From Macrostomum lignano (taxonomy: Eukaryota): DNA of 64,000 nt. This document shows, in pieces, positions 11,620-64,000 of this stretch. Location: NCBI GenBank assembly GCA_002269645.1, contig NIVC01000988.1, positions 328,405 through 392,404 of the forward strand, given 5' to 3'. Positions within the stretch are counted from its first letter, which is position 1; every line of letters starts with the position of its first letter. Under the pieces are notes generated by a model. The model searched no databases, was not told the origin of the DNA, and saw only the letters and a list, made by a program, of their open reading frames with translations. A program made the position numbers and the translations under genes.

Positions 11620-13860
11620 TTAAGGACTCGATCGCCAAGGTAGAATAGCTACCAGAGTGAAAGCTGTGATCCTCTGATCCGAAACGGATCGAGCGAAGAC
11701 TGCCACCGCGGCCGCAGCTCGCGAAGTTGATTTCGCTGCATTTTGTAAATCAACAGAGAGCAGCGAGCCGGAAGCTCCAGTGGCTGCCAAGTAAGATGAA
11801 GATCCTGGACCGGACATCCATGTTAACTGCGTGCCCAGAGAAGAAATCGACAAGGTGAGAGCACTTAAAAAATCTTCGGCGCATATACAATAGGCTTCTA
11901 TCTACTCATGGCTGGTCCAAGAAAATTACAAAGGCTGTTGAACTCTTAAGGCGGTCACTCCAGAGCAAGTACCGCAAAATTCGATTACTGCGTTCAAAGC
12001 ATTGGCAAATTAAACAAAGAGCCAAGACCCTAAAAGATGTGATTCGAGAGTTAAGGGCCAAATGTATTTTGAATGAAGCTGCTGCATCTCGGCTGAATTT
12101 CTTGCCCTCCGATTCACTGCTTAGCAGCATTTTGCCAAGCAAGATTGCTAAGAGGACAAGAATATTCTCCCACGAAGTGCGGAAATTCGCCTCCACATTG
12201 CACTTTTACAGCCCGAAGGCCTATGCGTATGCGAGACAGTACTTTCAGCTTTCACATCCAGCTTCGCTTAGAAGATGGCTCTCGAATGCGAAATGCTTTC
12301 CAGGATTTTGTGACCAAGCCTTTCAGGAACTTTCTCGGTGACGCAGCTCCAATGATGGCCGATCCTTCGACTACTGCAACGTTGTAGCTGATGGAAATGT
12401 CACTGGAAGCGATGGTTGAGTGGAATTCAAATGAAGGCAGTTTCTTTGGCTATGTTGACAAAAAGCGATGGCAAGTCAACTGGTCAGGAGGCAACTTCAG
12501 CATTGGTAGTGATGGCAGTGGGTCTCAAGAGCTATTGGAAGCTACCTTTAGGATATTTTCTAGTGAGCGGAGTTGATGGCGAATTTCTTTCAAGTGTCGT
12601 AGAGGAATCAATCCAGCGGCTCTACCAGGTTGGCGAATTATTGCCTCGTCATTTACATGCGATGGGACTCAGCACAATATTCGAGCGATCGAGCTTCTTG
12701 GTGCCAGAATAAGCTCTCCCAATGAGATCGTTGCCTCTTTCCCACACCCCTGCGATCCCGGCATTCAGGTTTCAGCCTTCTTGGATGTGCCGCACATGCT
12801 GAAGCTGATTCGAAACCAGTGGCAGTCCCTGGGAACATTTGTTTGGCCGGACAGAGGAAATATTGATTGGAAATATGTGTGCATGTTGCAGCAAGTACAG
12901 GAGAGCCATGGACTCAGACTAGGCAATAAGCTGAGCAGGCATCACATTAACATTGCTAATTTAAAGATGAAAGTTTATTTGGCCTCACAACTTTTTAGTA
13001 AGTCGGTGGCTGACTCGTTACGATGGGTGCACAAGCAAAGCTTGGCCGGATTTAATCATTCCGATGTATTAGTGACAGCAGATTTTATTGAGCACATGAA
13101 TGATCTGTTCGATGCGTTCAACTCGAAGCGATGGTAAATTATGGGGCTAAAATGGCTCTAAGAGCTGACAACCGGCCTGACTGGATCGACTTCTCCACTG
13201 ACTCGATCCAGCTTCTCAAGAGCTTAGAAACTCCAGCTAGATTCAAAATCGTTGACACTGCAAAGAAGACAGGATTTTTAGGCTTCATCACCAATTGCCT
13301 TGCCGTTATTGCGCTTGCCAAGTATTTATTTTCAACTGGCGAATTCTTCTTTCTTTGCACTTACAAGCTGTCTCAGGATTTTCTAGAATCCATCCAGCAC
13401 TGTACTCGTATGAATGCATCTAATTGATTGTGAGATTTGCCAGTCTATTGTGTATCAATTGCCAGAGCAGTTGTGCGAAGCATGTTGAAAGTTGTCGAAT
13501 GTGCTCCGTGCAGGTCAGCTCTGACTGCCAGCTCCGAGACGCCACCAGCTTTTCGTGCCCCTTGCTCACTTGTTGCCTTGAAGAATTTTTTGAACAAGGA
13601 AGGAACTGGCGGCTCGATTTTTCCAGCAGCTATGTCTTCCTACTCAGTGCTGAGTCTGTTATTCGATGTGCCAGCTGTAACAGCCAATTCTCCAGTGACG
13701 TAGCAGTTCACGAGACTTTGCGCAAGTCGAGCAATCTGTTCCGTGAGCTTGACTCGCATTCGGCATCCGCGAGCAGCGGCATTGAGTCGCACAAGCTCCA
13801 TTTAATTCGAGTCATGACCCTGCTCTTCACAAAGATCAGAATGAAAAACTAGCTAAAGAA
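11620..13860 (+). pseudogene. Decayed P-element/THAP9-family DNA transposase
   Basis: Motifs in successive frames: FASTLHFYSPKAYAYARQYFQLSHPASLRRW; EMS..FGYVD; WKLPLGYFL; TCDG..N; DVPHMLKLIRN; KMKVYLASQLFS.SVAD; FIEHMNDLFDAFNS; KTGFLGF; TYKLSQDFLE. Several frameshifts of both signs plus in-frame stops. Candidate intron 11855-11933. Confidence 0.9.
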
Positions 13861-14603
13861 CTTTCTCGCGCAGGAAGGAGACCAGGAAGGAGGCAGAGAC
13901 TACTTCGAGCAGCAATATTTCTTAATTTATAGTATATTCGAAACCAGGTGAGCTATTTATTGACTTAACTTCTATGCTATCAGCAAAAACAAAAAGTCTC
14001 ATTTTGTCTGCAAGCGTTTTTGTACGACGGTTTTTTAGTTTTTAATAAATAAATCTAAAATAATACTGGATTTAAACTGTTAAATTGCTAGTTGCACATA
14101 AAGTTGGTTAAATGGTTAGCAATCCGTGTTCCATGGCAAAAGGCAACAATTAATACAGCGGGCCCAATGACTGAGGGGTAGGAAAGGAAGGGAAGCCAAA
14201 AATATCGATCGTGAGGGCGTGGGAGCTGGGGTGCCATTTTTCCTACTTGGAAAGAGGCACACATTTCTTGCCCCACAATGCGCAGTCTAGTTATACTTAT
14301 TGGTCTGTGAGGAATACGTCTAATTGAGACGCCATATGCTACAGGTGCCTCTTGTCTGGCCACAATGGGCAAGAAACTCTCCGAAGAGATCGCATGTCTC
14401 TGCAGTCAGCTGTCACATAACAAATCAGAAACTATCTAGCGGAAACCAAACGCCACACAGCAACAAGAATTGAGTTTCAAGCCAAGCAGAGCAAAGCAAA
14501 GCAAAACGTCGGAGCGCTGATTAAAGTCCCGGAAAATAGCGAGTAGTTGTGTGATTTCTCTGACGTCACAAACGAAATACAAATTGCCACGTTAAAGACC
14601 AGA

Positions 14604-14915
14604 AGGGAGAGGGGAAGGAGAGTGGGGAGAGGGGAGAGGAGAGACGGGAGAGGGGAGAGGGGAGAGGGGAGAGGAGAGAGGGGAGAAAGAGGAGAGAGAT
14701 GGAGAGAAGAGAGAGGAGGGAGAGGAGGGGAGAGGAGGGGAGAGGAGGGAGAGGAGAGAGAGGAGGGAGAGGAGGGAGAGGAGAGAGAGGAGGGAGAGGA
14801 GAGAGAGGAGGGAGAGGAGGGAGAGGAGGGAGAGGAGGGAGAGGTGGGGCGAGGGAGAGGTGAGGGGAGGAGAGAGAAGAGACGGGAAAGGAGAGAGTGG
14901 AGAGGGGAGAGGGGA
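14604..14915. repeat. Polypurine (GGAGA-type) low-complexity repeat
   Basis: Almost only G and A on the + strand. Confidence 0.9.
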
Positions 14916-15296
14916 GAATTTGGAAATTAGGTTTTTCCAACTCTTGTCAGAGTCTATCACACATGAAGTGCTCTGTGTTTGCACACAGACAATTTCTGCA
15001 GCACTCCCACTGTGTGAGAGTCGAGATAAAATAATCCACAGTTGCGATCAATGTGCCTCTACAGTAGCATCTGTAAAAGAAAACGTACAATACTACTTTC
15101 AGTTTTCAGCACTCTGAGTCAAAAAATGAAATGCACTTTTACTAAATATTGGAAATAAAGTTTGCTTACGTATAACTTTTGAGTCAACTGGTGCAGATGT
15201 TCCGAGGCAGTGTGCATGAAAAACCGAGGGTAAAGTATAGGACAGAGAATGTACCTGAAAGATGTAGATAGACAGGTATTCACTGTCTCTTGAATG

Positions 15297-15327
15297 TAGA
15301 TAGATAGATAGATAGATAGATAGATAT

Positions 15328-15360
<33 letters not shown>

Positions 15361-15361
15361 C

Positions 15362-15409
<48 letters not shown>

Positions 15410-15423
15410 GGATAGATAGATAA

Positions 15424-15503
<80 letters not shown>

Positions 15504-15510
15504 TAGATAG
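15297..15510. repeat. (GATA)n microsatellite
   Basis: Directly visible. Confidence 0.95.
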
Positions 15511-15708
15511 CGAGAAAGAGCGAGCGAAGCGAGCTCTTTCGAGCTTGCTTGCCGCAGCCAATCAAGCTGAATGCACGCACACAAGATCACCGGAAACGAT
15601 TAAGGCAGCTGGAAAGCCAATGGGCGCGGTAAGCGCTTTTATCCAGAGGAACTACCTGCTGGAACCAGCCTGCCGTTCGAAAATCAGACTACTCAAGTAG
15701 TGCAAAAG

Positions 15709-16041
<333 letters not shown>

Positions 16042-16592
16042 GCTAACCATTGAAACAGCACGGCAAAATCGATAATAAGGAAAGGATTGAATAAACAAAA
16101 TGGCAGACTGAAGGCGGGGAGGCTGGCATGGGCAGCAAATGCTTCATCGATTCAGCTTGACCTTCCACAACTCTCTCTCACACAGGCAGTCGAGCTGAGG
16201 GTTGATCTGAGGATCTGGGATATAGGATATGGGAGCAAACAATTGCACCTGCTCCCAGTCGTTATCTCTGTCCGCTCTCTCAGCTGCCGCAGACTCTTTT
16301 GAGCATGCCAAATATGATAGCGATTCGCTGCCATCCAATCCGACTCCGCCAATTCCGCCCACTTTGTCTCCCTTCGTCTCTTTAACCTTCTACCCCTACC
16401 CTCCACCTTTCTCTCCCCGATTCGCTCTCTCCGAGAACCGGTTCGCTCGGCAAAAAAAATGCAGAGCTCACACCGGCCCCTGGTGAGCGCGGTTGCTTAA
16501 ATTGGAAACAGTCGCAGCTTCCCTGTCTGGCAGGTTTTTATCCCTCATCTCAATTCATTTCTTTCTTGGCGAGCCTCCTTGACAATAGCATA

Positions 16593-17088: not shown

Positions 17089-44600
<27,512 letters not shown>

Positions 44601-47249: not shown

Positions 47250-49751
47250 GAGCTTGTTGCCACCCAGAATCACGTGACCGGGAGATCCTATCAGTTCCCA
47301 CAGGGTTGTAAAAAGATGACAGGTGCGGCCATAAATCAATCAAAATCGCAACAAAATGATTTGACTTTTCGCGTAGGATTAACAGAAATTAATGAAAAAA
47401 TATACATTAGAAAGCTCTTATTAAATAGAAAATGAAGATAATGAAGAGAAACCGCTAATCGCTAATCCCAAAGTACTTTTAGGGGTAAAACGCATAGCTG
47501 TCAAAGCTGTCACACGCTTGAGTGAACCCGAACAATAGGCTCTGACCTCATAAATCTTGATGGCCTGTCAAAATGATGAGAAAAAAGCTACCGCCCGCAT
47601 CCTCTCAGACCATCTGGCGCCCGCCTCAACACTGAGTGAGGCGCAGGTGGCTGTCAGACCAGCTTCGAAAGCGATGATTTATGATCCAAAAAGCTGCGCC
47701 TATGTTATTATGACTACTAGTATGACCAAACAGTATATCTAGTATAGATTCTATGACTATTCGCAGAAAAAGGATAAAAATGCCCATTGCCCACTGTTAG
47801 TAGGCTAGTAAGTTTAGAGCCCATGTGCTAGCGCGGGATTTGGAAAAAAGTGCGTCCTCATCAATTCGATTAAACGGACCTTCACTTGTAGCCTCTGAGA
47901 AATTTTCATCGGATTATCGCTGCGCTCTAAAGTGTTGACAGTCAGGCCGTGCTTCTCATCGCCAATCTTGTCATACTGACCGCGGTGTAATTGGCTGACT
48001 GGTCGATGTCGTGATTTGTCTGGCCAATGTCATTATTTGCGGTTTATAAATTCCACTCACTGCCATCCTCTTCAAGTAGCTCGTCCGGATTACTCATTAA
48101 AAACAAGTCAGTTAAAAACAAGTTTACGCTGACAGTGAAAATTTGCATTGAATGCATATACTGTAGAATGATTAAATTGATGCTCCAAGGATTAAATTGA
48201 ACTCCGCTATGCCAACTTGTGTCGACCATAGACAGAAAATTTTCAGTCTCGCAAGTCATATAATTCCGCGTATCTATGATTAAATTGAAAGCTTGCAGTA
48301 CCAACTAGGCTGCAAAAAGGAATATAGCCTATATATATGCGTAGTCTTTAAGGCTAAATTTGTATCTAACCGCACGGAATCAGGAATCAAACACGGATAT
48401 TTCAAGCAAATGACTTATCACTGATATATAAATTTTAACTGTTACTGTTTAGCCATGCAGTTGGCCAGTTCAAGACCGATAATAAAACGTATTTTAAGTT
48501 GGAACTAAAAAAATCGATTTAAATGTTTATAGATACAATGAAAAAAACAAAAATTAGTGAATACCTATTTTCGTGTAAGAATACTGTACCGTAAATTACA
48601 GATTCTATACGATAATTTTTTAATGTAGACAAACTCTTAAACAGCTGTTTTTACATATTGTCAATGCCTAGTTACATTTCATTTTCGAATAATTTGTTCT
48701 TCGTAATTGTCATTCAATTTTAGTTAACTATCCCTCATTTACAGGATTAGTTGGCCTGTAACAGACTCAAGAAACTAGTAAGTTCTCCGTTTTTAAGCTT
48801 TCTCCTAGCACTCACGCGAAGTACACTGTTTTGTTTGGACAGTTTTTTATTTTGTCTTAAATTTTAATAGACGAGTGAGATTGACAATATTCTTTATCAT
48901 ATCATGGACCGTAACGTTACTCAGTCTGGTAAGTTTTACTGATTATATGTAGATTGATGGTCGAATGTGTTTCAGTTATTAATATTTCTGGCACTTAAAA
49001 ACAATTCCTACGAAAAAAAGCTTCATGGATAGGATAGGGCAGGGTGGTTCCTTGACACTGTCATCTACTCGTACCATTTTTTTTGGCCAAAGTATGGATG
49101 CAAATATGAAAACCTGGATGCAACTTGCCTTGTCATTATAGACAATTGAAAGCACATTTGAAAAGCACATGATAAATAATTTATAAAACAAACTTATTAA
49201 AAGCGGAAGCTAATATTCATTGACCAATACCATTTAATAATAAGAATTAAATAAGATTACATAATCTTTATTCCTTCATTGTCGCCGAATTTGACTAGAT
49301 TGTCGCCGCATTTGCTTTCGCCGAATTTTTCCATGGTGAATCGCTGTTGCTAAATTTGTTTGTCGCCGAATTGGTCAGCACTGCAATGTCGCTATCGTCC
49401 AAGGAGAAACTATCTGACTCTCCCAAACTTACCTGAATTTTTTAAACACTCGGGTTGTTGTTACGAGCACATCAACCATTTTTGTCTTACATGTATTTCA
49501 CAGTAGAAAAAAGAACCATCTCTTCAAAAGAAAGAACTCTTTGGAACGTGAACAGAAGCAGCAAATATGGTCCAATGTGTGCCGATCAACACTGCGCCTC
49601 AGTGCGGCCTTGCCAAGCCTTCGGGTGTCAGCAGCACGTCGACCGACTGTGCGGGAAACATGAGGGTATGGCAAAAAATGCTTGTTCGGGTGTCCATAGT
49701 CTTCCGGTGCCACTCGGGGGAGTGAGTCTAGCTGAGGATGTCCAGCAGTTG

Positions 49752-50816
49752 CCCTGTGAAAAATGATCGCTAGCCTTTCGCCAGCTAAATAGTAGCGAAA
49801 TTTCGCCGGCGAAATGGTAACAGAATGTCACTACTATTCGCCAGCGAAATGCCAGCAAATTTTTCCTGTAAATCGCCGCTATTTTGCCAGGATTTAGCTA
49901 CCCTCTAATTTCTTTATGAATTCACTTTTATTGATTTGATTTGCACGAAAAGCATTTTTAATGTAATATTACTGTTGTTTGTATTGTAACTCCTGTTTAT
50001 GTGAGAAGTTAACCCCCCTAACCCCCTTTCTTCAGCCGAAAATAAGCTTTGAAGTATAATAAAACTGCGGCTGCGGTTTGCGCTAGGCTTGCCTTGAGCA
50101 AACCGGCTTTAGTGCCCAAGCGCGCTGCGTCTGTGGTGCGCCCCCCCGCCGCGTGTGTACGTTCTGTGTTGTTTAGGTGGGCGCCCACCCCTCCGCCGGC
50201 GGGGGGGGGGTATTTTACTCCAGCCGCGCTGCTGAGTTGGCAGTGTTTTCGCGCAGTTCTCGCAGGCCTCGTTACTGCTTTCGCTTTCGCCAACATCGGG
50301 TATTCGTGTTTTGCTTTGGGGCACTAATGTTAGATTTAGAAATATCATATGTCAATGTTTTGAAAAAAGAAATATATTAATATACTGCATTATATATTGT
50401 ACGAGCTAAACAAAGAAAAATGAAAAAAATGCTGTCATGTGCCAAATTGGCACCAACCTGGAGCTGGAGGGCTGCATGATATTTAAGTTAGTTTTGGGCC
50501 ATTACCAAGCAATGGTTTTGTATGCACTGCATTAAACTGGAACTCAATAAAATGATAGGCAACATGCAATAAGTTAAAATTTTTACATTATGTGCAGAAA
50601 ATTCATGAATTAAAACTTATAAAATGCCGTATAACTTTATACAATTCTTCATATTTTATTATTCTTGAGTGTTTTTGTCCTCAGCATTATTGGCACTGGT
50701 CTTGTTGTCACTTGATTTAATGGCCATGCAGGAAGCCTGGCGAAATTTTTGATTTCGCTGTCTGCGCTACCAAGCTAGTGTTTCGCCGGCGTTTCGCCAG
50801 CTCATTTTTCACAGGG
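49752..50816. mobile_element. 1065 bp non-autonomous DNA transposon, CMC/EnSpm-like
   Basis: Perfect 15 bp TIR CCCTGTGAAAAATGA (49752-49766 and 50802-50816), 2 bp TSD (TG), and many subterminal ttcgcc(a/g)g / ggcgaaa repeats. Confidence 0.8.
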
Positions 50817-51510
50817 TGAGGTTTGCTCACTGTCGAGGCTTGATCAGCGAAACTAGAGAAATTCGCGATCAGGTGTTCATAGTCCACTGGTGCCACATGT
50901 TGAATGTCCAGAAGCTCCGCCTGGGTGAATGTCAGTGACCAACGAAGTCAGAGCTGATGCAGACACATGTGGTCGACGTGCTACTGAAATTTGAGGGCTT
51001 GGCGAGGCCGCACTGAGGCATAGTGCTGATTGGCGCACAGGGGTGTACTGAATACACTGGCGCGGATGGGAAAAATCTGACAGAATCGTTGAATATCTCG
51101 ACAGTCCAGAGGGCTGGCGACTTGATTCTTGTTTGAGAAGGTGTGGAAAAAAATGTTAGCTCGGGTTCTTGAATTTCGCGTGACTGCGTTGCCATACATA
51201 CGCAACCTCCAAATTCAGTCGGCCGTGCAACCTAGTTTTAAGCAAGAAATGCGACTTATTTTTAAACCAAAAATGCAACTTACTTGGGGTCGCGACAGTA
51301 AAGGACTTTTTTTGGGGGAGGGATCGTGACAAAAATGATCCTTTTTTGAGGTCCCGTTAAAAACAGCCTTCTGTTGTTTTGTTTTAATGTAAGTACATTA
51401 ATACAATTCTAACTTTCCTTCTTTCTTTTCCATTTTTCTATACCTTACACTTTAACCTCAGGTGTCCTCAGGACTTCGCTTCCTGATTGGCTCCTTGCTA
51501 CCGACGAGGA

Positions 51511-54500
51511 ATGCTAAATGAATTGAACACGAAAAAACCTCTGCTGGGCAGCTGGGGTACACTTAGTTGCCTCTGGCTGCGACATGGTCTCTGTTTTTGC
51601 TTCTTTCCCTTTGTTTTTCTCCTTCCCTGCCTCTCTTTTCCCTCCTGTCACGCTTTTTTCTTTCTTATTCCCATCCTTTTTCGTCTAATTAGTTGGCCGC
51701 TTCGGCCGACTCGTCCGACTGTTGCGCATGTATGTGCGTTGTTCCGTTCCGGCACAGGAAAACAATTATCAGGGGGAATCCCCCCGTTGGTAGTTCTACT
51801 GGCAGAAAAGGTATTCCTACTGTTAATTACTACATTAGAAGAGGAAGAGCAAAATAAAGGGTAATGTTTTCCTTACAATGTTCAATTCCTTAATTCCTTA
51901 CAAAATTCATTTCAGAAGTCAGCAGGCTAGCCCTAATTCTCACTGAAAATAGATTCACTGAAGAACCCTCTGTCACCAACGTCAAAGACATTCTCACTAA
52001 TAGCGGCTTTAGGGTTGAATCGAACGTGCTGGGAAATTATGCTCAAGACATAATATCGTTCGTGCCTGATGAAATTTGTCGGTCGACAGTTCAGCAGTTG
52101 ATCATTATTGTGATCGCCAACGCTCAATATCCGAAATGCATGGATGATTTCCTGAAACTGATGACTGACGGTGGATTTTTCGACCTTCAAAAGCGCTTTC
52201 TCTTATTCTGCAGAGTTTCCAATGGTAATGAAAACACCAGCGACTTGCAGTTGCAGAAAAATTTTCTAGCAATAGTTTCAAGTACAAGAGCGCAATCGTT
52301 GGGTACAAGTTTGACGCCGAAGAGAAAATAAGAAACTTCATTAACTGGCTCGCTCAAGAAATGAACACTTGCTGGAACAATAGCTGCCTATCAGCCATGC
52401 TTAGCAGATGGTTGCCAGCTCATGATGAAGAAGATTTGTACATGTATCCAACAGGAAAATGCAAGCGACCTTTCCTACGGGACATTTTATTTCACCTTGA
52501 TAATCGAGAGCAGCAAGAAGGTAACGGCCCGATGGCAGCTGGAGCCGAGGGCCCGATGGCAGCTGCAGCCGAGAGTCCGATGAATGCGACAGTCGACAAC
52601 GACCAGATTGCTTCCCTGATTTACCCGAACAAGCGCACTCCCACCAAACCCCAAGCTCTGATCATTCTCTATTTCAACAAGAGTGCAGCGCCGTGCGAGT
52701 CTCTCCAGGCCGACTGTTTGCGGCTGATGAAATTATTCAAGTTTCGCCTTGGCTACCTCGTGACAGATATTCAAGTTGATTCAGAGAGCCAGAACGATCT
52801 TGAGGACAGAGTGAAGAGCTTCGCAAACCAACAAGATCACGGTGACTCGTGCGTCCTCATTATTTTGTCACTGTCGAACGGTCTGCTGTGTGGCCACTCC
52901 ATCATCAATCTTTTTAGCCAGATGTCGCTCAGCAAGCAGCTAAAAGGCAAACCGAGGCTGTTTCTTTTGAATGAGTGGCAGAGTGGCGCACAGACTGGCC
53001 GACTTGCTGATCCAGCCAGTCCGAGCGAAGCATTTGAAATTTTGCCAGACACTGTCAGTTCAATGGAGGACTATTGGGGCACCAGAAATGAGACATCTAA
53101 AGTTCACCCCTTTAGTGGAATGGTATTCGGCCTTGCCTCAGCAAACAATGAGACAGATGTAGATGGGAGTGATTTTGTTAGAACGCTCTGCACGACCTTT
53201 GAGAAGTTCGGTAGCACTAAAGACGTAGTGTCCATGAGTGCCATAATTAATGAAGAACTGTCAGTTTCTGCTAAAGCGTTGCCTCGCTGGATTATTCAAA
53301 CAACGAAACTTTTTTTCATCACAAATACAGGTGGACTGGAAAGTAAGTTTCCCAATCTTCTTATAACTTATTCTATTCCCTTGTACGAGCGTAGTTGAAG
53401 ATTTAGTATATTGTGATTGTGCATTATTTGGTATAATTTACATTTACATTTCATTGCCTGTGTTTCTCACAAATTTGTCTTTCTTTATTAATTTCAACCT
53501 ACAGCAACAAGTCAAAAAGTTTCACCTAATGGGCCTCAAGACAACGGTGAGAAAATTTATACTGACAGCATGAGCTACGTTCAGTTATGTACTAACTTGA
53601 AGAGTTGATATTTATAGATAACATTTGAAACTATTAAAAATTTCTAAGAAAACATTACAAATGCATTTTCAGCTTGCACCAGTGAGAGAAACAAAGCTGG
53701 TAAGTTGGAACAATCTAGAATAATTACGAGTTCTTGACATTTGAATTGTATGTGGTTCGCGACTGCATGTTGCAGAAATTTTTCCGCCTTACTTAAAGGC
53801 GCACAACTCGCTCAGCAATCACACCACACATACAGGTGACTGCATGGCGATAGGGACAAGGGGAAGGAAAGGGAGAAGGGGAAGAGGGAGAGGAGAGGGA
53901 GTTGGTGAAACAACTTGAATACTTGTTTTAGTTAGCCGAGAATTCCTAAAGGGAAAGCGATAGCGACGACAATTTATATATTTGATAAATCAATAGAAAA
54001 GGAATAAAACGTGAAAATGAAACTTTGCGTGTGTGTACAGTAATCAATGTACGCAAGGGAATAAAAGACCGCGCACGACACAGGACAACCACCCCAAACC
54101 CACGCAAGCACAAACAAGACCGCGCTAGCTCACACCACCACTGTGGGGACGGAGGAAGTGAGAGGAGAGATCAGGGAGAAATAAGGTAAGGAGGAAGGAA
54201 AAACGGGACTCGCACTACTGATCAAGACCAGTCGAGTAGGGAGCATTCCGGACCAATGTCGCCCGACCCACACTACTCGTATGACTGGCATCCAGTTCCA
54301 GAGCTGAGCAGAGTCAGCCGCCTCCTGATTAGAGGGCTTTCACAGCTGACAGGAAAGCCGGAAGGAGAAGTGGGATTGGTTGGGGAAACAATGGAGATGG
54401 GACAAGGGATCGACAACGCTCACCCAACCGCCCAGACGGTCGAAGCAATCCAAACTGCCACCACTTGTGGCGCTCCTAGTTGCCACCTTGGAACTTTAGA

Positions 54501-57283
54501 GAAACGAGTCCCCGAATTTCTACTTCCAACTTAGCCAATACAACACGCGTTCAGAGGGCTCCGTGCATTTCCGTTTTAGACTAAGTTTAGCTCAGAATGA
54601 AGTCACAATCAGATCGGGTTCACGGATCACTCGATGTTCAAGCACGAGGTCTTTGCTCAAGCCGAACTGAGAGCTACACGTATCAACAATTGATTCTGAC
54701 TAACCGACTGAGGACCCTAAAGCAGCCTGTTGTGAGGCAGATGAAGCTGATCCTCGTAAAAGCGTATTAGCTGACTCAGGAGCGAGAGCCCAAGCAGGCT
54801 GGCCGACACGCGAAGGGGAAGACGGGAAAATGAGCAATGAGCAGAAGCTCGGGTATTGAGCATTCGGGTAGCTAATAAGGGGAGATATGCAGGTCATACA
54901 GTAAAGACAACGAAGACAATATAGGAGGGAAGGCTCGAAGATAGCTGTGCACCATTTGATAAATTTCAGGCTGTGGGTCATATATCGGTTAGAACAGAGG
55001 AACATCGGTTACAGACTCTATAAACTTGCAAAACTGCAATTAGCCTACCCAAACCTACATGACTTGGGTAGAGGATCGGGAGCTACGAACGACTTCTGCT
55101 CCATCTATGAGGCTTTTCAAATAGTCGATTCTAGAACCAGAATCCGTTCTGAAATTCCAGGAAATGAAACAGTAAAATTCTCTAGCCCCTATAAACAAGA
55201 AAAGAACAGACAGTAGATAATTTGATTACATATGACAACTAACAAAATGATGGCAGAAAATCAAACACTCACGTGTAAATATCATATTGTAGCGGCAGAC
55301 GGGCCCGAAACAGACAGGGAGGCCATGCAGACAGACCGAACAGTGCATGCGTCTGCACGCTATCCCCCTGTTTGCTTTGCTGGGGTGGGCGCTCGCCCCA
55401 GACAGCTCCTGGTTTGTGACTCACGCCCCTTTGTTCGCACCTCCCCATGCTGGCTGTTCCCCTTTTACAAATAAAACAAATAAAAGCGATGCACTTCTGC
55501 TTCGTCTGGTCTAACGCTTCTTGCAGACCACTAAAATATCATATACTCCAGGAAAGAAGTATAGAAGTATAGTTTTACTACTTGGATTCACAGATATTCA
55601 GAACCGATTTGGGTCTGTAATTGGCAATTTGAAAAGCCTATTTAAACTTTTAAAAATGGGCAACGAATGAGAAATTACTGAGAAATTCTCCGACTCCAAC
55701 TGACCGTCTATCACATCACTTTGCCGTCTATTGAGTGTACTGAATCTAACGCATTGCAGCCTTCTTTGACGCTAGTAAAAAGTACTTAATACGAGTATGT
55801 TCTCTACAAAATTTCAGGTCGAACTGGTGTTGCCTTGATTTTCACAGAGTATTTATTCGATGCTGTCAGAAACTACCAAACGTTTCTTGAGTACGCAAGC
55901 TTTAAAGTACACGTGGACCGCACACGTGGTGACATGAAATCGTTAAGAAAAGCGTTCGATCGTGAGAAAGACCATTTTCAAAAAGACCTCGTAGTTATTG
56001 TTGTCGTGCGCCACCGTCATAGCGATGGGGATCTGTTGCGAATAATCGGCGATATTGGTATCACGAGATCGACAGAAGCTCGCCACAGCACACTGCTTAT
56101 CCATTGCGAGGTCCATGACACCGAAGAATCTTCTCAGAGGGAGTTACAGGTAGCCCGGCAAGTAGAAAACTTGCCTGACAAGTTCAGCATGGCCTGTTTC
56201 TTTGGCAATGAAGAGGAAGTCAAAGAATTTCTTGACTCATTGCTCCAAGATGCGAGGATGTCAGAAAGCCTGAATGGAATTTCCGTTGTTGGCAGAAATT
56301 TTCAAGACGGGCGCACCTCTCAAAGAAACTTCGTGTTCAAGCGTAATGATGAAATCCCAAAATGGGCAACGGGAAGAGTGATTAAATGGCTAGGCAACTA
56401 TACTATCAAATCAAGTGTTCAACGATCTACTACTGCGCAGGACGACACCGTTCAGTCAGAAGTTGTAGTTGATGAGTTCCGACTGTCCGAAACGCGGAAG
56501 AGATGGCACCCAAAGCTCCCCCCAGCAATCGAATCCACTTCAGAATGTGTCAGAGCACCCAGAGCACTCATCGTGCACAATGTTATCTTCAAAGAGAAAC
56601 TAAGCGCTAGGCTCGGTAGCCAGCATGACTGTCAAAGGCTGACAGAGAGTCTCCTAAGACTCGGCTACAAGGTCTCGATCAGGTCGAATCTCAACGGAGC
56701 TGAAATTAAACACGAAGTTAAGAAGTTTTCCGAAGAGTCTGACGACGGCAGGTCATCTGTCGTTGCGTTTATGTCTCACGGACGCCTCGGCGAAGTCTTC
56801 GGCTCTGATGAAGAGCCTGTAGGAGAAAAAGATGTATTACAACTTTTCTCAGATGAATCAGGGACAAAAGACAACTTTCAGCTAGCCATATTTCAGTGCT
56901 GTCGTGTTCCAGGTCAATTACCAGACGAGGTGTCGTGTCTGGCCTTCTACCCGGGTATGATAATCGCTCACTCTACCCTGCCAAATGACTTCAGTCTGCG
57001 TGTGAAGAGCAAGGGCAGCCGGTTCATCCAGAGCTTCTGCACAGTGCTGGATCTTTTTCCTCACAATGACATTGTAACGATCATTCCTCTGGTGAATTAC
57101 TTAATGCTCAACTCGATTTATCAAGGATTCAGTCAGCAGCCTTGGTGGTTTGTTCAAAGCGGAAAAAGGTTCTGGCCCAAAGTTCAAGGTGCTGGTGAAA
57201 ATTCACAAAATCCGTCAGAATGCAACAATGCTTTTGACTTACAGGAGTTACAAAAAATTATCGAATCAGATCACCAGGATTAG
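51511..57283 (+). CDS. Multi-caspase-fold protein gene 1: degenerate module A1, pseudo-caspase B1, microexon linker, module A2, active-type caspase C1
   Basis: Predicted exons 51511-51556 (tentative), 51916-53342 (one frameshift at the A run 52257-52261), 53505-53546, 53673-53699 and 55818-57283; all introns phase 1 and in frame. C1 has FMSHG (His 56777) and FQCCRV (Cys 56900). B1 has ILSL and LLNEW in place of SHG and QAC. Confidence 0.75.
52361..53342 (+). CDS. Caspase-like (peptidase C14 fold) pseudo-protease segment B1 of gene 1
   Basis: PQALII..DCLRLMKLFKFRLGY..FANQQDHGDSCVLIILS..LKGKPRLF..DGSDFVRTLC; donor GAA A|gtaagt. The ORF reads through to a stop at 53398 if unspliced. Confidence 0.88.
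55277..55544. mobile_element. Possible solo-LTR-like or other short insertion (246 bp) in a gene 1 intron
   Basis: Starts TGTAGCGG (55288), contains two AATAAA, and is flanked by the 11 bp direct repeat aaatatcatat (55277-55287, 55534-55544). No clean CA end. Confidence 0.4.
55818..57283 (+). CDS. Terminal exon of gene 1: module A2 + caspase C1 with intact catalytic dyad
   Basis: PRALIVHN..ARLGSQHD..LGYKV..VVAFMSHG..IFQCCR..MIIAHST..SLR..GSRFIQSFC. Confidence 0.93.
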
Positions 57284-58986
57284 CCTGCAGTTGAGGATCG
57301 TGGAGCAGCCCCTGTTCCAGGTCATTGATACCCTGTGTGGATCATCGGGCAGAGCATGATGATCTTAATGCGGTTGCTTCACTAACTTCTAATGGGATTC
57401 GTCTGACTGATGACGCTCCTGATGCTCCATATAATTCTAAAAGTTGTGCTGGAGTGGACAGCCCTATCCAACTGCGTTGAGTATAATTAATTAATTAACG
57501 TTGATTAATGCGCAAAAGTAAGAGTAAATTTATTTATACTATAATATAGCACGTTTTTTAATAATTCTCACCCATTGTTAATTGTTGTAATCCAATTATA
57601 GGTAAATGTAATACAAATCAGAAATTCTCCATAAAGTACACTGGCAGATCTAATGAGGGATCGAAGCTACTCCGTACGTTGCTTGGTCCACTACACCCCA
57701 AGCACAGCAGCACCTGGTACATTAAATAGACTATTGTATTTCAAATATTCCCATTCCTACGGACATATATTTCTTGCCATGGCTTGCCCCTCTCGGTTGT
57801 TCTGCGAACGCGTCCGCGCAAAGTCTAGCTAGATCTCTTTTTGTCTGTGCTTTTGTCTGCGTCGCTATATATATATGCTCCATATAATTCCATATAATTA
57901 ATTCCATATAATATATGGCTGAGACTCAGACACCGGGTCCTTGGTCGGTTTAGGGGCAGGCATAGAAACCGTCCAGCCAAACCGTCTAGCTAGAGCACAT
58001 AAAATTGAAATTGAAATAAAAAATGATTGCAATTGAATAGCCGCGTGTAAGCCGAAAACACAAAAGGGACAAAATGTGTTTATTGAATCCTTGTTTTCTA
58101 TTCGCACAATATCTTTCACAACGCTCGACGATTTGCTTCTACTTCTTTACACATTTATCGTTTAGTTCGTGTGGTTGATAAAAATACTGTACATATTTTA
58201 TTATTTATACCGGAAATTTTCAACACATTTTTCTTGAACTAATTTTTAATTTGTATTTAAATCCTTTATACCAAATTTAAGCTCAGATCGCGTCATAAAC
58301 TTAGCTAAAAACAATTGTTTAAAATAATTTTCACATTCTTGCTATTTGAGAATTAATCTGACGTCAACTACTTGAACTAATAACGTTCCGCAACTATTGC
58401 GATGACTTTTTAATAGAAAGTTTTTACTGCTCAATGTATGAAGCTTAACGTATTTAGTTAATAATTATTAGTACTATTTTTTTCAGCCAGCTATCATTAA
58501 CAATCCTCGGCTAGCTCTTGATTATGAGCAATTTACGGTTAATTATTTGTGAAGTTCCACTGTCCTGCTGTTTCTGTCGCTTAACAGTTTTTTTCTAACA
58601 ATACAGCAAAAAATGCTTCATCATTCACCTCAAACCGTTTCAATTGACTTTCATTTTCTACGAGCAGAAACGTGTTAAATAGAAACTAAATTTAGATAGA
58701 GATTTAGGTATATTGATTTAGCTGTTTCAAAATGCTAAGACAGTTCGAAGTCAAAAGATAAATCGAGAGCACACAAATCAACAGTTTTCTAAAATAAAAA
58801 TCACTCGTAAAATCACTTTATGCACTGTCAGGTAGTTCAGGCAAGTGTTTTGTACTCGTACTGCAAACAGCTAAATTTCATAACAATTTGCTACCGAATT
58901 TATGCCCCTTTTCAGCGAGAATTTTTCAAAGGCAACTTGAGAGATTTAAAACAAATAAAAACATCCGTTGATTTCTATCAGAAAAC

Positions 58987-61506
58987 ATGACGAAAGACGC
59001 TTCAACTTTTATTGGTAAGGGGTTCGCTTTCTTCATAAATTTTCTATAGCTGACGAAAGATCTATAAAATACGTATACTTGAATAAACGTTTAAGCCGAA
59101 ACTTTTAGAACGATCGTATGGCAACCGCCCAAAACGAGACAATTTTTTTAATTTTTACCCTTTCAGATCATCGCCGACTGCTGCTGGTCTTCGCTGATGA
59201 ACACAAAGACATGCTGATAAATTATACCGAGTTTATGGAGAGTAAATGCGGATTTTTTAGGAAGACATTTCCCCTCGCAAACATTTCTGACGGCTTTGCT
59301 GAACTCGACAGCGGTCCAGTCATTCAAGTTGTCTGCGCCGTCGTCTGCTCGGAGACATCCGCATGCAACATGGAAGACTTCCTGAAGCCTCTTATTGCTC
59401 GGTTTGGGAAAGATGTCGATCAGCTGCTGCTGTACTGCAGAGTCTGTGATGGCAACCCAAATGAGAAGGATGAAGAATTAAAAAGTAAATTCAACGCCAG
59501 TGGATTCGAATACAAAAATTCGACAATTTCTTACATTGCTGACAGTTCTGACAATATTAGAAAGTTCCTAAGTGACAGCCTAATCAAACAGAAGACCAAG
59601 CAATGGAATGCCGAAACTTGTGCAGCTGATGTTCTTTACAACATTGAGGGTTTTGAAAAATTGTGCGTACAAAAGACAAAGAATTTTTTGCGACACATCA
59701 CGGAACCACATACGTCTGGGCAATCTGGCGCCATTTCATTCGCTGAGCCGTTTACCAATCATATCAACACACAGATCTCCGACAATTCGTTGATTTATCC
59801 TAATAGTCGTGAAACTTTTCCGAAGGCTCTTATCATTTTAAACATCTACCCAGAAAATAATATCAGCAAAGCAATGCTCACGGACTGGAAGCGTCTGCTG
59901 TGGCTGTTCGACAAACTGCAGTTCAAAGTCACAGATGTGCAAACCGACGCCAGTACTGAGAACGCAGCAGAAACCAGTGTGAAGAATTTTGCAAACTCTG
60001 AATACCATGGAGATTCGTGCGTCTTAGTGATTCTGTCTGAGCGCAAGCTCAGCCAAAACTTTATTCGCAAAACCAGCGACTCTATGGCAGCTGGCGAAAA
60101 CTCCAGGACAAGCCCAGACTGATCATCCTGCAGCACTGGGAGACCAAACCGCCAAGTGCCGATGGCGCGCCCGCTGGACTTTCCCAGTTCGTGCCGGCTA
60201 TTGTTGACTCAATCCGGACCCGCCGCAAACACACAAGCCTGAAGTGCGAGTTCATCCGCATGGCGGAATGATTTGGTGCCAGCCGGCTGCTGCAGACTCC
60301 GACACTGATGACGGCAGCTCACTAGTTTGGGTGATCTGCGACACCTTCATCAAATATTCAGCCACTGAGGACGTGGTGTCAATGATTTCGCTGATCAATG
60401 AGAAGCTGAAGGCCTCGCCTCCACTGTGGTGTGTGCAGACTACCAAGTATTTCTTCATCACAGACACCAGTCGTCCATTGAATAACTCACGTGAGTACCT
60501 TTTTTGAGCTTATTCAAATTATACCTCGTATTTTAATATTCCATAACTTATCTTTCGACTGTGAAATCGTTTTGTCGAATTGTGCAGTTGCTCTGTGATT
60601 CGGAATTACGTGCATTATTACTAACCAGAACAGGTAGAAAAGAGCAAATGTATTCGTAATTACGTTAAATCAGCCAGCACAAAAAGGTAGCACAATAAGC
60701 TAATGAGGGTCAGTCGATGGAAAATCTTAAACACTATTTCAGTCTAAAAGCTGCCTCATTCCATCGATAAAATGTCTCTTAAAAAACCTTTTTTCAGTCG
60801 AGCCACCTTCCACTAAAGAAAGCGCAAAAGCGGGTCTCGCCTTAATAATTAATAACACATTTAAGAACGACTCCAAATTTGTAAGAGAAGGAAGCGACAT
60901 CGATCGTGAAAAATTGAAAAGTACTTTCAAAAAGTTTGGTTACGACACTAAAATTGCGGAGGATCTCAGTGCAGAGAAAGTTCGATCTGAAGTGAAACAA
61001 TTTGCCGATGATAGCCGTCACGGTGACACCTGCATTGTGGTCATCATGTCCCACGGAAAACTGGGAAAAATCATTGGAGTCGATCACTCGGAAGCGTCGG
61101 AAACGAAAATTCTTAAAATACTGAACGATAGCAAAAGCCTTTCAGGAAAGAAAAAACTCGTCATATTTCAGCTATGCCGAGATCACCCAGATGGAAGCCC
61201 ATCGAGCAATTCTGACCATCCCACTCGACTGGTCTACCCGGACATGATCGTGGCGCACTCGACAAGCATAGGTGAAAAAAGCTTTCGCAGCACAGATCAA
61301 GGCAGCCGGTTTGTGAATAGCCTGTGCGATGCTCTTGACAAGTTCGGGAAAGGCTCAGACATCGTCTCGCTCATCAGTGCCATCAACTGCATTATGATGA
61401 GAAGTTTTTACGATAAACTAGTACAATTAAAGATGACACCCAGCTGCCCTTCTGGCTGGTGCAGACCACGGGCCCTTTTGTTCTCGCCAATCTTACGGAT
61501 GGCTGA
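58987..61506 (+). CDS. Multi-caspase-fold protein gene 2: module A3, pseudo-caspase B2, active-type caspase C2 (three apparent frameshifts)
   Basis: Exons 58987-59014 (MTKDASTFI G|gtaagg), 59167-60490 and 60798-61506; both introns phase 1. B2 has HGDSCVLVILSE and KPRLIILQHW. C2 has VREGSDID, VIMSHG (His 61052), IFQLCRD (Cys 61175) and GSRFVNSLC. Frameshifts near 60055-60072, 60227-60229 and 61413-61415. Confidence 0.78.
60798..61506 (+). CDS. Caspase catalytic domain exon (C2) of gene 2
   Basis: GLALIINNTF..REGSDIDREKLKSTFKKFGY..CIVVIMSHG..KKLVIFQLCR..DMIVAHSTSIGEKSFR..QGSRF. The C-terminal LPFWLVQTT strand is in the shifted frame. Confidence 0.92.
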
Positions 61507-63375
61507 GAAGTCGCTCGCACTGGTTCCGATAAGGGCTTTGGCATCCGAATAAGGGCAAAATGCATGACAGACACTCGCAGTGTTAATTTTTTTATTTATA
61601 TCACTAATTCAATTTTAGCTTCTAAAACATTGTTTTTAAACAATCATAAGCCCTACCGTCAGTAGAATTTTTTTGACATTTTGCGTTTTTCAGTCGGTGC
61701 TTGCGCGATATTTATTGGTTTATAGACGCACAATTTCTGATTGTTGCAAATTATAGTGCCTCTACTTTTACCATGGCCAAATGTGCCAATGGATTGATTC
61801 TGTTCTACGCGGCCACCCACATTGAAATAAAAAAATTAAGAAATAAAAATACCAGGGAGCGGGCACCCTAGCTGCAGTCACTGCAAATGTACAAGCTTAG
61901 ATTGCTTCCTTCATCATCACAATCACAATATACTAAATCTTCATCACAATATACTAAATCTCTAAGGTTTGTTTGTTTTACCGGTATCACAATATACTAA
62001 ATTTCTAACGTTTGTCTGTCTTATACTTTAAATCTCTAAGGTATGTCTGTCTGACCGGTATTCAGTCTACAGCCTGAATGCCTGAACCGTTTTTTTTAAC
62101 ATGCTTTATTCAATTGCAAATTCTTGTGAGATTTTGTGGATTTAATTGTGAGGCAGAATCCTTATAAACTATGTATATTACTTATAACAGTAGTTAAACC
62201 CGAGTTTTAATCACAGCCAATCAGAAATTTTCTTCCCCATTTGTTTAAATTCTCCAAGCAAATCAAATTCTTTTGTTATAATTTTAGTAATTGTTAAAAT
62301 GCGTCCCACCTTCCCCAAATTTTCTGTATATATGGAATCAGGTTGACGCTAGAAAAATATAACCTCGGCGATCGTTCTCAATAATTGCCTTTAACTATTC
62401 TTGCGAGAATCTTTTAGCGAAACAAATCTAAATTTGGCTAAGACTTATCTCGTTATTTCTTTCATAAGATAGGGAAACCAGAGGTCGTGGAGACCCAAAA
62501 CCAGGACTCTAGATAGGGAAAACCAGAGGTCGTGGAGACCAGAACTGGGATCTGGTTAGGAACTTGAGGTCGTGGAGCCCAAGAATAGAAACCTGAGTAG
62601 GGAGATCGAGATCGTACAGATCCTAAGAAAGCCGTACAGGCCAATAATAGGCATTAGGCATTAAGAGATTAGGTATTAGGGAAGTAGATTAGTTACCGCT
62701 GGACACCCTTGATCCCTGGAAAACGCTAGACTTTCGGACTGAACTAGTAGGGAATTAGACAGTGTCTTACCGCTCGCGGCACTACACTCTATCGCAAGGT
62801 TTCTAGGAAATCGTGTGAAATTAGAAATCTCTAGGAAAGAGTCATAGATTAGGGCTGCCAACGCTACTCAAAGTAGATATATTAGTGACAATTTATAGGA
62901 TAGAGAAATTAGAACTAAAGGACTGCAGCAAATTGGTGAGATAATTTCAGTAGGAACCAGAAGGGCTAGCACAATTGCATTGAAAAATTCGAATGGGAAA
63001 GTGTTAAATATTCGAAAAACGAGTTTTCCCAATGCTTTCAATCGGAGGCTAGAAAAGGTCAAAATCTCGACTAACTGAATAGCAATTCCAATTAAGATTG
63101 CGCCACAACTTTTCTCTTTTCACTGTGTAGGCCTCAATACAGGCTGCCGTGTGCAGCGGAGAGGAAAATACACAGTGGCTGCGTGTGTACATTCTGACCC
63201 TGGCTCTGACTCCATAGAAAATTGCTATTTATAGATCTCACTCAACTGTGCATTGGCTCTGCCTGCATACAACCTGTGCACACTGAGCAAGCCTATCACT
63301 GCATGAACATGTATTTGACTGCAGTGCCGAAGCATATATGGCAGATTTTTGTGCTCTCCGATCAGTAGGTGAATA

Positions 63376-63446
63376 GCCGAGGTGTAGGCACTAGGATTAG
63401 GTTTAGTCTCGGCATAAGGTCCAAGGTTCGAGTCTGCCTCCTCGGC
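63376..63446 (+). pseudogene. tRNA-like sequence (degenerate tRNA pseudogene or SINE head)
   Basis: Perfect 7 bp acceptor stem GCCGAGG/CCTCGGC, 71 nt long, with B-box GGTTCGAGTC. The T-stem and anticodon stem are broken. Confidence 0.5.
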
Positions 63447-63949
63447 GGATGATTAAAATCAAATAAATTTATTCATATATAGCTTGGACCTCAACTAATT
63501 GGAATATTTTTGTTGAATTAGCAAAGCAAAGCCAGCTACAGTGAGAGGCCTGCAAGTTAATGCATTGAAATTAAAAACCAAGCCAATGCCCAGGACTAAT
63601 TGAATAGCGACACCCGCCCCTCAATTTCAATATCAAAAATGTGTTGCGCAACCTTTCAACGCTTGTAGCTCTCCACGCGAGTGTAGAGAACCAATGCTAT
63701 AGTTGGCACTGAGTTATGATGCAATACAATTGCATCGACAGTCAGAATGCTTCTCAATCAAAAAGAAACTGTTTGAACTTTAAAAAACGGGGCAAAAAAT
63801 CGAGTTTTTCGAATATTTAATCCCGAAAAAAATTAAGCATTCCTTTGCAAAAAAATGGTGTACCAGCGCTCCATAAATACGCATCGAATGCAGAAAACCC
63901 CACAAAATTCTGACTACGCAGAGTCAAGTTAAACGAAGGTTCCTATAGA

Positions 63950-64000
63950 TATGATAGATAGATAGATAGGATAGTAGTAGTAGGTAGTAGGTAGGTAGGT
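63950..64000. repeat. (GATA)/(GTAG) simple repeat running off the window end
   Basis: Directly visible. Confidence 0.85.

What the first reader, a model, noticed from the sequence alone, without database searches (positions are those of the whole stretch)
52615..60490. Both pseudo-caspases replace the catalytic Cys with Trp, recalling cFLIP
Seen: B1 KPRLFLLNEW (Trp 52976) and B2 KPRLIILQHW (Trp 60137), with the catalytic His replaced by Leu and Glu. Scaffold motifs (IYPN, ALII, HGDSCVL.ILS, DGS, DVVSM..INE, QTTK.FFIT) are conserved between two otherwise very divergent paralogues. Known: cFLIP has an aromatic residue (Tyr) at this position. Inference: a selected pseudo-enzyme with a plugged active site rather than random decay, convergent with vertebrate FLIP.
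Basis: partly seen in the sequence, partly recalled or inferred. Interest (0 to 1): 0.72.

Follow-up and report, generated by a model that had tools for sequence, protein, structure and literature searches.

The report
Dead caspase domains in flatworm double-caspases
Two genes of the flatworm Macrostomum lignano each join a catalytically dead caspase domain, with a bulky Trp where the active Cys should be, to a working caspase domain in one protein; this design is already known from coral caspase-X and resembles vertebrate FLIP, so it is a new example rather than a new principle.

Summary
B1 has Trp (TGG 52976-52978) and B2 has Trp (60137-60139) at the catalytic-Cys column. Leu (52871) and Glu (60039) sit at the His column. 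Both P1-binding Arg residues are also lost.

The window is the last 64 kb of Macrostomum lignano contig NIVC01000988.1. B is not a stand-alone protein: transcript-based gene models join it to an active caspase domain (A1-B1-A'-C1 and A2-B2-C2).

Two 1-nt deletions flank the Trp codon, and two more lie in the A1/B1 linker and in C2. A 98.5 % identical sister contig has every frame intact, so these are assembly errors or a decaying duplicate.

An old paralogous cluster carries two more B domains, with Trp and Tyr. All four share the same lost residues and indels. dS is saturated, omega is about 0.1-0.2, and dN is similar to that of the active C domains. B is therefore a maintained pseudo-enzyme.

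The closest precedent is coral caspase-X, a tandem inactive/active caspase with Phe at the Cys column. FLIP has Tyr. Trp, Tyr and Phe are all one mutation from Cys. The "plugged site" idea is untested. No B-type relative was found outside M. lignano.

The parts
51918..52257 (+). A1: N-terminal alpha/beta domain of gene 1. A 1-nt deletion at 52257 (in a GCAG|AAAAATTTT run) cuts it off from B1 in this window.
   Evidence: tblastn of P0001 gives two frames in the window but one frame in L001. Indel list, sequence.
52595..53342 (+). B1 pseudo-caspase domain (exon ends at 53342, donor GTAAGT). Leu at the His column is 52871-52873; Trp at the Cys column is 52976-52978.
   Evidence: Pfam PF00656 E=1.2e-10; alignments; AF2 plus Foldseek match caspases; codon coordinates.
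53505..53546 (+). Mini-exon 2 of gene 1 (linker between B1 and A').
   Evidence: Matches P0002 residues TTSQKVSPNGPQDN and is flanked by CAG| and |GTGAGA.
53673..53699 (+). Mini-exon 3 of gene 1 (linker).
   Evidence: Matches P0002 ACTSERNKAG and is flanked by CAG| and |GTAAGT.
55818..57283 (+). Last exon of gene 1: A' domain (55820-56302) plus the active caspase domain C1 (56555-57175). His is 56777-56779 (SHG); Cys is 56900-56902 (QCCR).
   Evidence: Pfam E=1e-30; caspase-3 alignment; P0002 model.
59166..59699 (+). A2: N-terminal alpha/beta domain of gene 2.
   Evidence: Alignment of A domains; AF2 pLDDT 81.
59778..60490 (+). B2 pseudo-caspase domain, split over three frames in this window by 1-nt deletions after 60096 and 60236. 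Glu at the His column is 60039-60041; Trp at the Cys column is 60137-60139. The exon ends at 60490 (donor GTGAGT).
   Evidence: The intact copy is P0003 on L001.
60798..61506 (+). C2 exon: active caspase domain of gene 2. His is 61052-61054 (SHG); Cys is 61175-61177 (QLCR). A 1-nt deletion at 61414 shifts the C-terminus; the stop in the shifted frame is 61504-61506.
   Evidence: Pfam E=5.9e-29; P0003 junction NNS|LEPPSTK with acceptor TTTTCAG|; indel.

Best explanation
B1 and B2 are catalytically dead caspase-fold domains kept by selection inside 'double caspase' proteins of Macrostomum lignano.

Each gene encodes an N-terminal alpha/beta A domain, the pseudo-caspase B, and an active caspase C. 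Gene 1 also has a second A-type domain between B and C.

B has lost the nucleophile (Cys to Trp, or Tyr in one paralogue), the general base (His to Leu, Glu or Gln) and both Arg residues that hold the P1 aspartate. It therefore cannot cleave.

Inferred, not shown: B acts as a built-in partner of C. It would pair with C through the alpha5/beta6 face that caspases use to dimerise. That would give a single-active-site pseudo-dimer whose activity B tunes. This is how FLIP(L) works with caspase-8 in trans, and it is what was proposed, with cell-death assays, for coral caspase-X in cis.

The aromatic side chain at the former nucleophile position probably fills and stabilises the dead cleft.
For: Shown:
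- Identity of the dyad columns and loss of both P1 Arg residues in all four B paralogues.
- Caspase fold.
- Long-term purifying selection: dS is saturated; ML omega is 0.19 for B1-B5, 0.13 for B2-B4 and 0.17 for C1-C5.
- Intact ORFs in L001 and L003.
- B and C are joined in three GenBank models (P0002, P0003, P0004). These derive from RNA-seq/StringTie assemblies (PMC5730564). All junctions have canonical GT-AG splice sites.
- The same two-gene layout recurs in an old paralogous cluster, L003.
- alpha5-beta6 is the most conserved part of B (54 % mean identity, against 41 % for the p20-like part and 20 % for the linker). The same region of C is at 39 %.

Precedents:
- FLIP(L) has R315/Y360 and activates caspase-8 as a heterodimer (PMC7586951).
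- Acropora caspase-X is a tandem inactive/active caspase. Its inactive domain restrains killing in HeLa cells and was modelled as a beta6-beta6 pseudo-dimer (PMC4715348). It has Phe at the Cys column and Glu/Gln at the His column.
Against: - No structural or biochemical test of B-C pairing was possible. Both AF2 jobs went to single domains, and no coordinates or PAE are returned.
- In gene 1 about 240 residues (A' plus linker) lie between B and C, so pairing in cis is less obvious there.
- Between the window and its 98.5 % identical sister copy, coding changes are 20 nonsynonymous to 5 synonymous (A2-B2: 6 to 1). Recent constraint on at least one copy is therefore relaxed, or the differences are errors.
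- The window's own copy carries four frameshifting deletions.
- The aromatic residue may reflect mutational access from TGY rather than function.
Confidence: 0.6

Rival explanations
1. The B domains in this window, B2 especially, belong to a decaying duplicate. The frameshifts are real, and this copy of the cluster is becoming a pseudogene after the recent genome or chromosome duplication in the DV1 line. The sister copy would carry the function.
For: - There are four 1-nt deletions in coding DNA of the window copy (52257, 60096, 60236, 61414) and none in L001.
- Coding substitutions between the copies are 20 nonsynonymous to 5 synonymous.
- The DV1 assembly holds 180 Mb of blocks that are at least 95 % identical (PMC5730564).
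Against: - One-base deletions are in excess across the whole 15 kb overlap, 27 in the window against 6 in L001. Most lie in non-coding DNA and they are densest at the contig end. That is the pattern expected of long-read consensus errors.
- All longer coding indels between the copies are multiples of 3 (3, 3, 6, 3 nt), so they keep the frame.
- B1 is identical in both copies.
- REAPR rated only 64 % of the assembly's bases error-free.
- Even if true, this concerns one copy and not the family.
Confidence: 0.3
2. B is a stand-alone regulator acting in trans, as FLIP or the mosquito decoy caspase does, or a bait or sensor whose dead cleft binds a ligand or a pathogen-derived caspase inhibitor. 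On this view the fusion to C in the gene models is secondary or partly an artefact.
For: - B's nearest active relative by score is the single-unit caspase P0007, not the C domain in cis.
- The changes between the recent copies are mostly amino-acid-changing, as is often seen in immune genes.
- Two UniProt models of this locus differ. P0001 is clearly chimeric.
Against: - Three independent loci give B-C fusions with canonical splice sites and compatible phases.
- B2 and C2 are separated by only a 307-nt intron and a linker of about 22 residues.
- No B-only gene was found.
Confidence: 0.15
3. The shared Trp has no particular meaning. It is simply inherited from one ancestral Cys (TGY) to Trp (TGG) mutation in an already dead domain. 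The resemblance to FLIP Tyr and coral Phe reflects that three of the seven one-step non-stop substitutions of a Cys codon give aromatic residues.
For: - The codons are TGG in three lineages and TAC in one.
- The B domains are paralogues, so their Trp residues are not independent events.
- The chance that three lineages are all aromatic is about (3/7)^3 = 0.08 (own arithmetic).
Against: - The flanking positions of the former QACRG motif vary freely (NEWQ, QHWE, HEWD, QEYQ), while this column stays aromatic although dS is saturated.
- Going from Trp (TGG) to Tyr (TAC) needs at least two nucleotide changes, yet the result is again aromatic.
Confidence: 0.3

Closest known systems
Acropora millepora / A. 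digitifera caspase-X ('double caspase'; Moya et al. 2016, PMC4715348)
   Same: - One polypeptide with an N-terminal inactive caspase domain followed by an active one.
- The inactive domain lacks His and Cys.
- By my alignment of their Additional file 5A, the Cys column holds an aromatic residue (Phe) and the His column holds Glu or Gln, as in B2, B4 and B5.
- It is a multi-copy, lineage-specific family.
   Different: - No detectable specific sequence relationship. phmmer scores between Macrostomum B and coral CASc* fall below reporting, and no coral protein appeared in the exhaustive search. Independent origin is likely.
- Macrostomum proteins carry extra A domains (A-B-A'-C or A-B-C).
- They have Trp/Tyr instead of Phe.
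- The B domains have deleted the L3 'SxR' segment and changed the beta5 motif.
Vertebrate cFLIP(L) (CFLAR), the pseudo-caspase partner of caspase-8
   Same: A caspase-fold domain with both dyad residues replaced and an aromatic residue (Tyr360) at the nucleophile position. It is kept by selection as a regulator of an active paralogue (PMC7586951).
   Different: - FLIP is a separate protein that is recruited through tandem DEDs and pairs with caspase-8 in trans. Here B is fused in cis to the active domain and there are no DEDs.
- The His column is Arg in FLIP and Leu, Glu or Gln here.
- The two are not orthologous.
Other clan-CD pseudo-protease partners, from my own knowledge and not tested here: the separase pseudo-protease plus active protease domains; Aedes aegypti decoy caspase CASPS18, which enhances CASPS19; C. 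elegans CSP-2/CSP-3
   Same: A dead caspase-fold module that regulates an active one, either in cis (separase) or in trans (CASPS18, CSP-2/3).
   Different: They belong to different families and have different architectures. No sequence relationship was examined.

Membership tests
Caspase family (Peptidase C14A, PF00656) - fold membership of B | Significant match to the caspase domain profile, and the caspase fold order beta1-alpha1-beta2-alpha2-beta3-alpha3-beta4 / beta5-alpha4-alpha5-beta6. | tested here: met
   PF00656 E=1.2e-10 for B1. The AF2 model has this order of elements. The top 50 Foldseek PDB hits are all caspases, E about 1e-7, TM about 0.55. The window's B2 fragments alone do not reach the Pfam threshold.
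Active caspase | Catalytic His (SHG) and Cys (QACxG). | tested here: not met
   The His column is Leu, Glu, Gln, Glu and the Cys column is Trp, Trp, Trp, Tyr in B1, B2, B5, B4. The neighbouring C domains keep SHG and Q.CR.
Active caspase | The Arg residues that bind the P1 Asp: the L1 Arg and the L3 'SxR' Arg. | tested here: not met
   The L1 column is Cys, Ser, Tyr, Asn. The L3 Arg lies in a 4-residue segment that is deleted in all four B domains.
Pseudo-enzyme (maintained, not a pseudogene) | Open reading frame and purifying selection across diverged homologues. | tested here: met
   Intact ORFs in L001 and L003. dN is 0.38-0.68 with saturated dS. ML omega is 0.03-0.19, similar to the C domains. 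Caveat: all comparisons are between paralogues within one species, and the window's B2 copy is frame-broken.
Pseudo-enzyme (maintained, not a pseudogene) | The domain is expressed. | tested here: inconclusive
   The GenBank models P0002, P0003 and P0004 come from an RNA-seq-guided annotation (PMC5730564). I could not inspect reads. Exact-product look-ups in other assemblies found nothing.
Tandem inactive/active 'double caspase' (caspase-X type) | An inactive caspase domain lies N-terminal to an active caspase domain in one polypeptide. | tested here: met
   P0002 (B1-A'-C1), P0003 (A2-B2-C2) and P0004 (A-B-A'-C). Splice junctions are canonical and in phase.
Tandem inactive/active 'double caspase' (caspase-X type) | Common descent with coral caspase-X. 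| tested here: not met
   No score between Macrostomum B and Acropora CASc* in pairwise phmmer. Only M. lignano proteins and one Artemia caspase were found among 1.84 billion representatives.
cFLIP-like regulator | Pairs with an active caspase domain through the beta6/alpha5 interface and modulates its activity. | not testable with these tools
   Only indirect support: alpha5-beta6 is the most conserved part of B.
cFLIP-like regulator | Tandem DED prodomain, and orthology to CFLAR. | tested here: not met
   No DED is found by Pfam. The N-terminal domain is an alpha/beta fold.
TIR domain (for the A domain, as a UniRef name suggests) | A match to TIR profiles or to the TIR fold. | tested here: inconclusive
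   UniRef names P0006 'TIR domain-containing'. Pfam gives no TIR hit at E<=0.1. A profile search of PDB sequences finds no TIR. Foldseek ranks caspases and SAVED-CHAT (TMq 0.52-0.56) above a plant TIR (TMq 0.41), all at weak E of about 3e-3 or worse.

The most novel reading that the evidence does not exclude
An aromatic side chain at the former nucleophile position may be a convergent, functionally required feature of regulatory pseudo-caspases. It appears as Tyr in vertebrate FLIP, Phe in coral caspase-X and Trp/Tyr in Macrostomum. It would lock the dead cleft in an 'occupied' conformation that is passed across the beta6 interface to switch the partner's single active site. Macrostomum would then offer a third, independent, cis-linked system in which to test this. 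In addition, the A domains may be cryptic, further degenerate caspase-fold modules, making these four-module caspase-fold proteins.
Probability: 0.25. Interest if true: 0.6.

Novelty: new variant of a known kind. Interest (0 to 1): 0.45.

Why it matters
Pseudo-caspases are rare. FLIP(L) is described as the only one in humans (PMC7586951). How a dead protomer controls a live one is central to the choice between death and survival.

A third, independently evolved pseudo-caspase/caspase pair gives a natural comparison for asking which features of the dead partner are required. This one is hard-wired in cis, has an aromatic residue at the nucleophile position, and sits in a transgenesis-ready flatworm.

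It also adds an undescribed, lineage-specific caspase architecture to flatworms. Recent surveys reported only one unusual caspase prodomain for M. lignano (PMC11463336).

For the genome scan itself, this is a warning. The window is a contig end with excess 1-nt deletions, so apparent frameshifts here should not be read as biology without reads.

Tried and rejected
- The search for homologous proteins with B1 returned only one chimeric UniProt model, P0001. With the B-domain alignment it returned nothing, even at E<=10, although family members are in the collection. I treat that as a tool limitation, not evidence.
- MAFFT alignment of the three B2 frame fragments to B1 was poor and was not used.
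- NG86 and YN00 dN/dS failed or saturated for most pairs. Only ML values are quoted, and only as upper-bound-type evidence.
- Exact-product look-ups of P0001 and of the window's B1 and B2 ORFs in other assemblies found nothing. There is therefore no independent check of the frameshifts.
- The TIR identity of the A domain was not supported by Pfam, by a PDB profile search or by Foldseek. The alternative that A is a cryptic caspase domain was not supported by hhalign either, with probability below 1 %.
- Random decay of B is rejected on ORF retention and omega.
- Common descent with coral caspase-X is rejected for lack of any specific similarity.
It was rerun without them.
Full report
**What the window is.**
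- The B1 ORF matched a UniProt protein of Macrostomum lignano at 100 % identity.
- The locus of the GenBank model PAA73902.1 (P0002), fetched as L002, is an exact suffix of the window.
- The window is therefore the last 64 kb of contig NIVC01000988.1 of the Mlig_3_7 assembly (GCA_002269645.1).
- This is flatworm nuclear DNA with introns, so the ORF lists show exons, not genes.

**Check of the observation.**
Their Trp codons (TGG) are at 52976 and 60137.
- B1 is a caspase domain by Pfam (E=1.2e-10). C1 and C2 are strong caspase domains that keep SHG and Q.CR. C1 aligns with caspase-3 across both catalytic motifs.
- I aligned B1, B2 and two further B domains with four C domains and two other active caspases. 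The B residues at the key columns are:

| Column | B1 | B2 | B5 | B4 |
|---|---|---|---|---|
| Catalytic Cys | Trp | Trp | Trp | Tyr |
| Catalytic His | Leu | Glu | Gln | Glu |
| L1 Arg | Cys | Ser | Tyr | Asn |

- The L3 Arg lies in a four-residue segment that is deleted in all four B domains.
- The AF2 model of B1 (pLDDT 62, pTM 0.66) has the caspase order of strands and helices. The Leu sits at the end of strand 3 and the Trp at the end of strand 4. All of its top PDB matches are caspases.
- The sequence observation and the "pseudo-caspase" label are therefore correct.

- In the window B2 is spread over three frames.
- A sister contig (L001, NIVC01000269.1) matches window 48984-64000 at 98.5 % identity. 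It differs by 76 substitutions and 45 indels.
- 27 of those indels are one-base deletions in the window, against 6 in L001. They are densest towards the contig end.
- Four of them hit coding DNA: 52257 (between A1 and B1), 60096 and 60236 (either side of the B2 Trp codon) and 61414 (C2 C-terminus).
- In L001 all these frames are open, and the annotated protein P0003 runs through A2-B2-C2.
- The longer coding indels between the two copies are all multiples of three.
- The assembly paper reports heavy redundancy (180 Mb in blocks at least 95 % identical) and only 64 % error-free bases by REAPR (PMC5730564).
- I think consensus errors at a contig end are the more likely cause. A genuinely decaying duplicate cannot be excluded without reads.

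**Gene structure.**
- P0002 joins B1 to A'-C1 through two mini-exons. P0003 joins B2 to C2 across a 307-nt intron.
- Every junction has a strong GT-AG pair and the correct phase.
- The GenBank annotation was built from RNA-seq (StringTie/TACO/TransDecoder).
- A third model, P0004, has A-B-A'-C.
- B is thus a domain of a "double caspase", not a free protein.

**The family.**
- An exhaustive HMMER scan of 1.84 billion cluster representatives with B1 found seven proteins. Six are from M. lignano and the seventh is an ordinary Artemia caspase at E=8e-4.
- Contig L003 carries an old paralogous cluster with the same two-gene layout. Unit 1 (B5) has ...ILHEWD. Unit 2 (B4 = P0004) has ...IIQEYQ.
- P0005 and P0006 are further copies, with Trp and Tyr respectively.
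- The nearest active relative is P0007, a single A-plus-caspase gene with no B domain nearby.

**Selection.**
- All pairwise dS values between the four B lineages are saturated. ML estimates are shown below.

| Pair | dN | dS | omega |
|---|---|---|---|
| B1-B5 | 0.50 | 2.6 | 0.19 |
| B2-B4 | 0.38 | 3.0 | 0.13 |
| C1-C5 | 0.34 | 2.0 | 0.17 |

- For C2-C4, dN is 0.67.
- B therefore evolves under purifying selection of the same order as the active domains. All copies outside the window keep open frames, which excludes random decay.
- Within B the alpha5-beta6 region is the best conserved, at 54 % mean identity against 41 % for the p20-like part and 20 % for the linker. This region is the canonical caspase dimer interface.
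- The recent copies tell a different story. Between the window and L001, B1 has no differences, A2-B2 has 6 nonsynonymous to 1 synonymous, A'-C1 has 11 to 0, and C2 has 3 to 4. This points to relaxed or diversifying evolution, or to base errors, in the last step.

**Comparison with known systems.**
- FLIP(L) replaces His and Cys by R315 and Y360 and forms an active heterodimer with procaspase-8 (PMC7586951).
- Closer still is Acropora caspase-X. It is a tandem inactive/active caspase whose first domain restrains killing in HeLa cells. It was modelled as an intramolecular FLIP/caspase-8-like pair through the beta6 strands (PMC4715348).
- I aligned the sequences printed in that paper's Additional file 5A. 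The inactive coral domain has Phe at the Cys column and Glu or Gln at the His column.
- Three independent pseudo-caspase lineages therefore carry an aromatic residue at the nucleophile position.
- Trp (TGG), Tyr (TAY) and Phe (TTY) are each one step from Cys (TGY). They make up 3 of the 7 non-stop one-step substitutions, so the coincidence alone is weak (about 0.08).
- Two things argue for some selection for bulk. The column stays aromatic while its neighbours vary, and a change of at least two steps, from Trp to Tyr, kept it aromatic.
- No specific sequence similarity links the Macrostomum and coral domains, so independent origin is likely.

**Mechanism.**
- Shown: B cannot be a protease, is maintained by selection, and is encoded on the same predicted transcripts as an active caspase.
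- Inferred by analogy: B pairs with C through alpha5/beta6 to form a single-site pseudo-dimer and tunes its activity.
- Inferred: the aromatic residue fills the dead cleft.
- The upstream A domains are confident alpha/beta folds (pLDDT 81) of unclear affinity. They may mediate recruitment or oligomerisation.
- None of these inferences could be tested here.

**Verdict.** This is an undescribed flatworm variant of a known design and is of moderate interest.

Noticed in passing
window 55934-56114 (A' domain of gene 1) vs L001 6939-7119: Ten nonsynonymous and no synonymous differences fall within 60 codons between the two 98.5 % identical copies. The flanking 4 kb is almost identical. This could be gene conversion from another paralogue, diversifying selection or local errors.
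   Followed up: partly
window 59166-59699 (A2), 55820-56302 (A'), 51918-52257 (A1): The A domain that precedes every caspase-type domain folds confidently (pLDDT 81) as a five-strand alpha/beta sandwich. Foldseek ranks caspases and SAVED-CHAT above TIR, all weakly. A UniRef name calls one family member 'TIR domain-containing', but Pfam does not. Most A copies have a Cys just after strand 4 (LLLFCRV), and A' copies also have a His after strand 3.
   Followed up: partly
window 48984-64000: The window is a contig end that overlaps another contig (NIVC01000269.1) at 98.5 % identity. It carries 27 one-base deletions against 6 in the other contig, increasing towards the end. This part of the assembly is redundant and probably error-prone.
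   Followed up: yes
L003 (NIVC01000896.1:286839-311032) 4572-8274 and 11122-14194: An old paralogous copy of the whole two-gene cluster, with both units as A-B-A'-C. This shows that the tandem pair predates the block duplication and that gene 2 of the window has lost its A' domain.
   Followed up: yes
window 60854-60872 and 61213 (C2): Three in-frame indels (3, 6 and 3 nt) distinguish the C2 domains of the two near-identical copies. The two contigs are therefore truly different copies, not one locus assembled twice.
   Followed up: partly
window ~17100-44600 (+): Exons of a TRP-channel-like gene with ankyrin repeats (ORFs at 17100-17741, 20593-21228, 34267-34644, 41260-42054 and 44103-44600) lie upstream of the caspase cluster.
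   Followed up: no
window 14500-16100, 17743-18528, 21273-23481, 30465-34410: Long micro- and minisatellite arrays produce spurious long ORFs in several frames on both strands. This fits the repeat-rich M. lignano genome.
   Followed up: no
P0001 (UniProt A0A1I8H3..., ML2 assembly): This public model of the locus is chimeric. It reads A1-B1 up to 'EILPDT', then jumps through non-homologous pieces into parts of C1 and skips the catalytic-Cys strand. It should not be used as the reference protein.
   Followed up: yes
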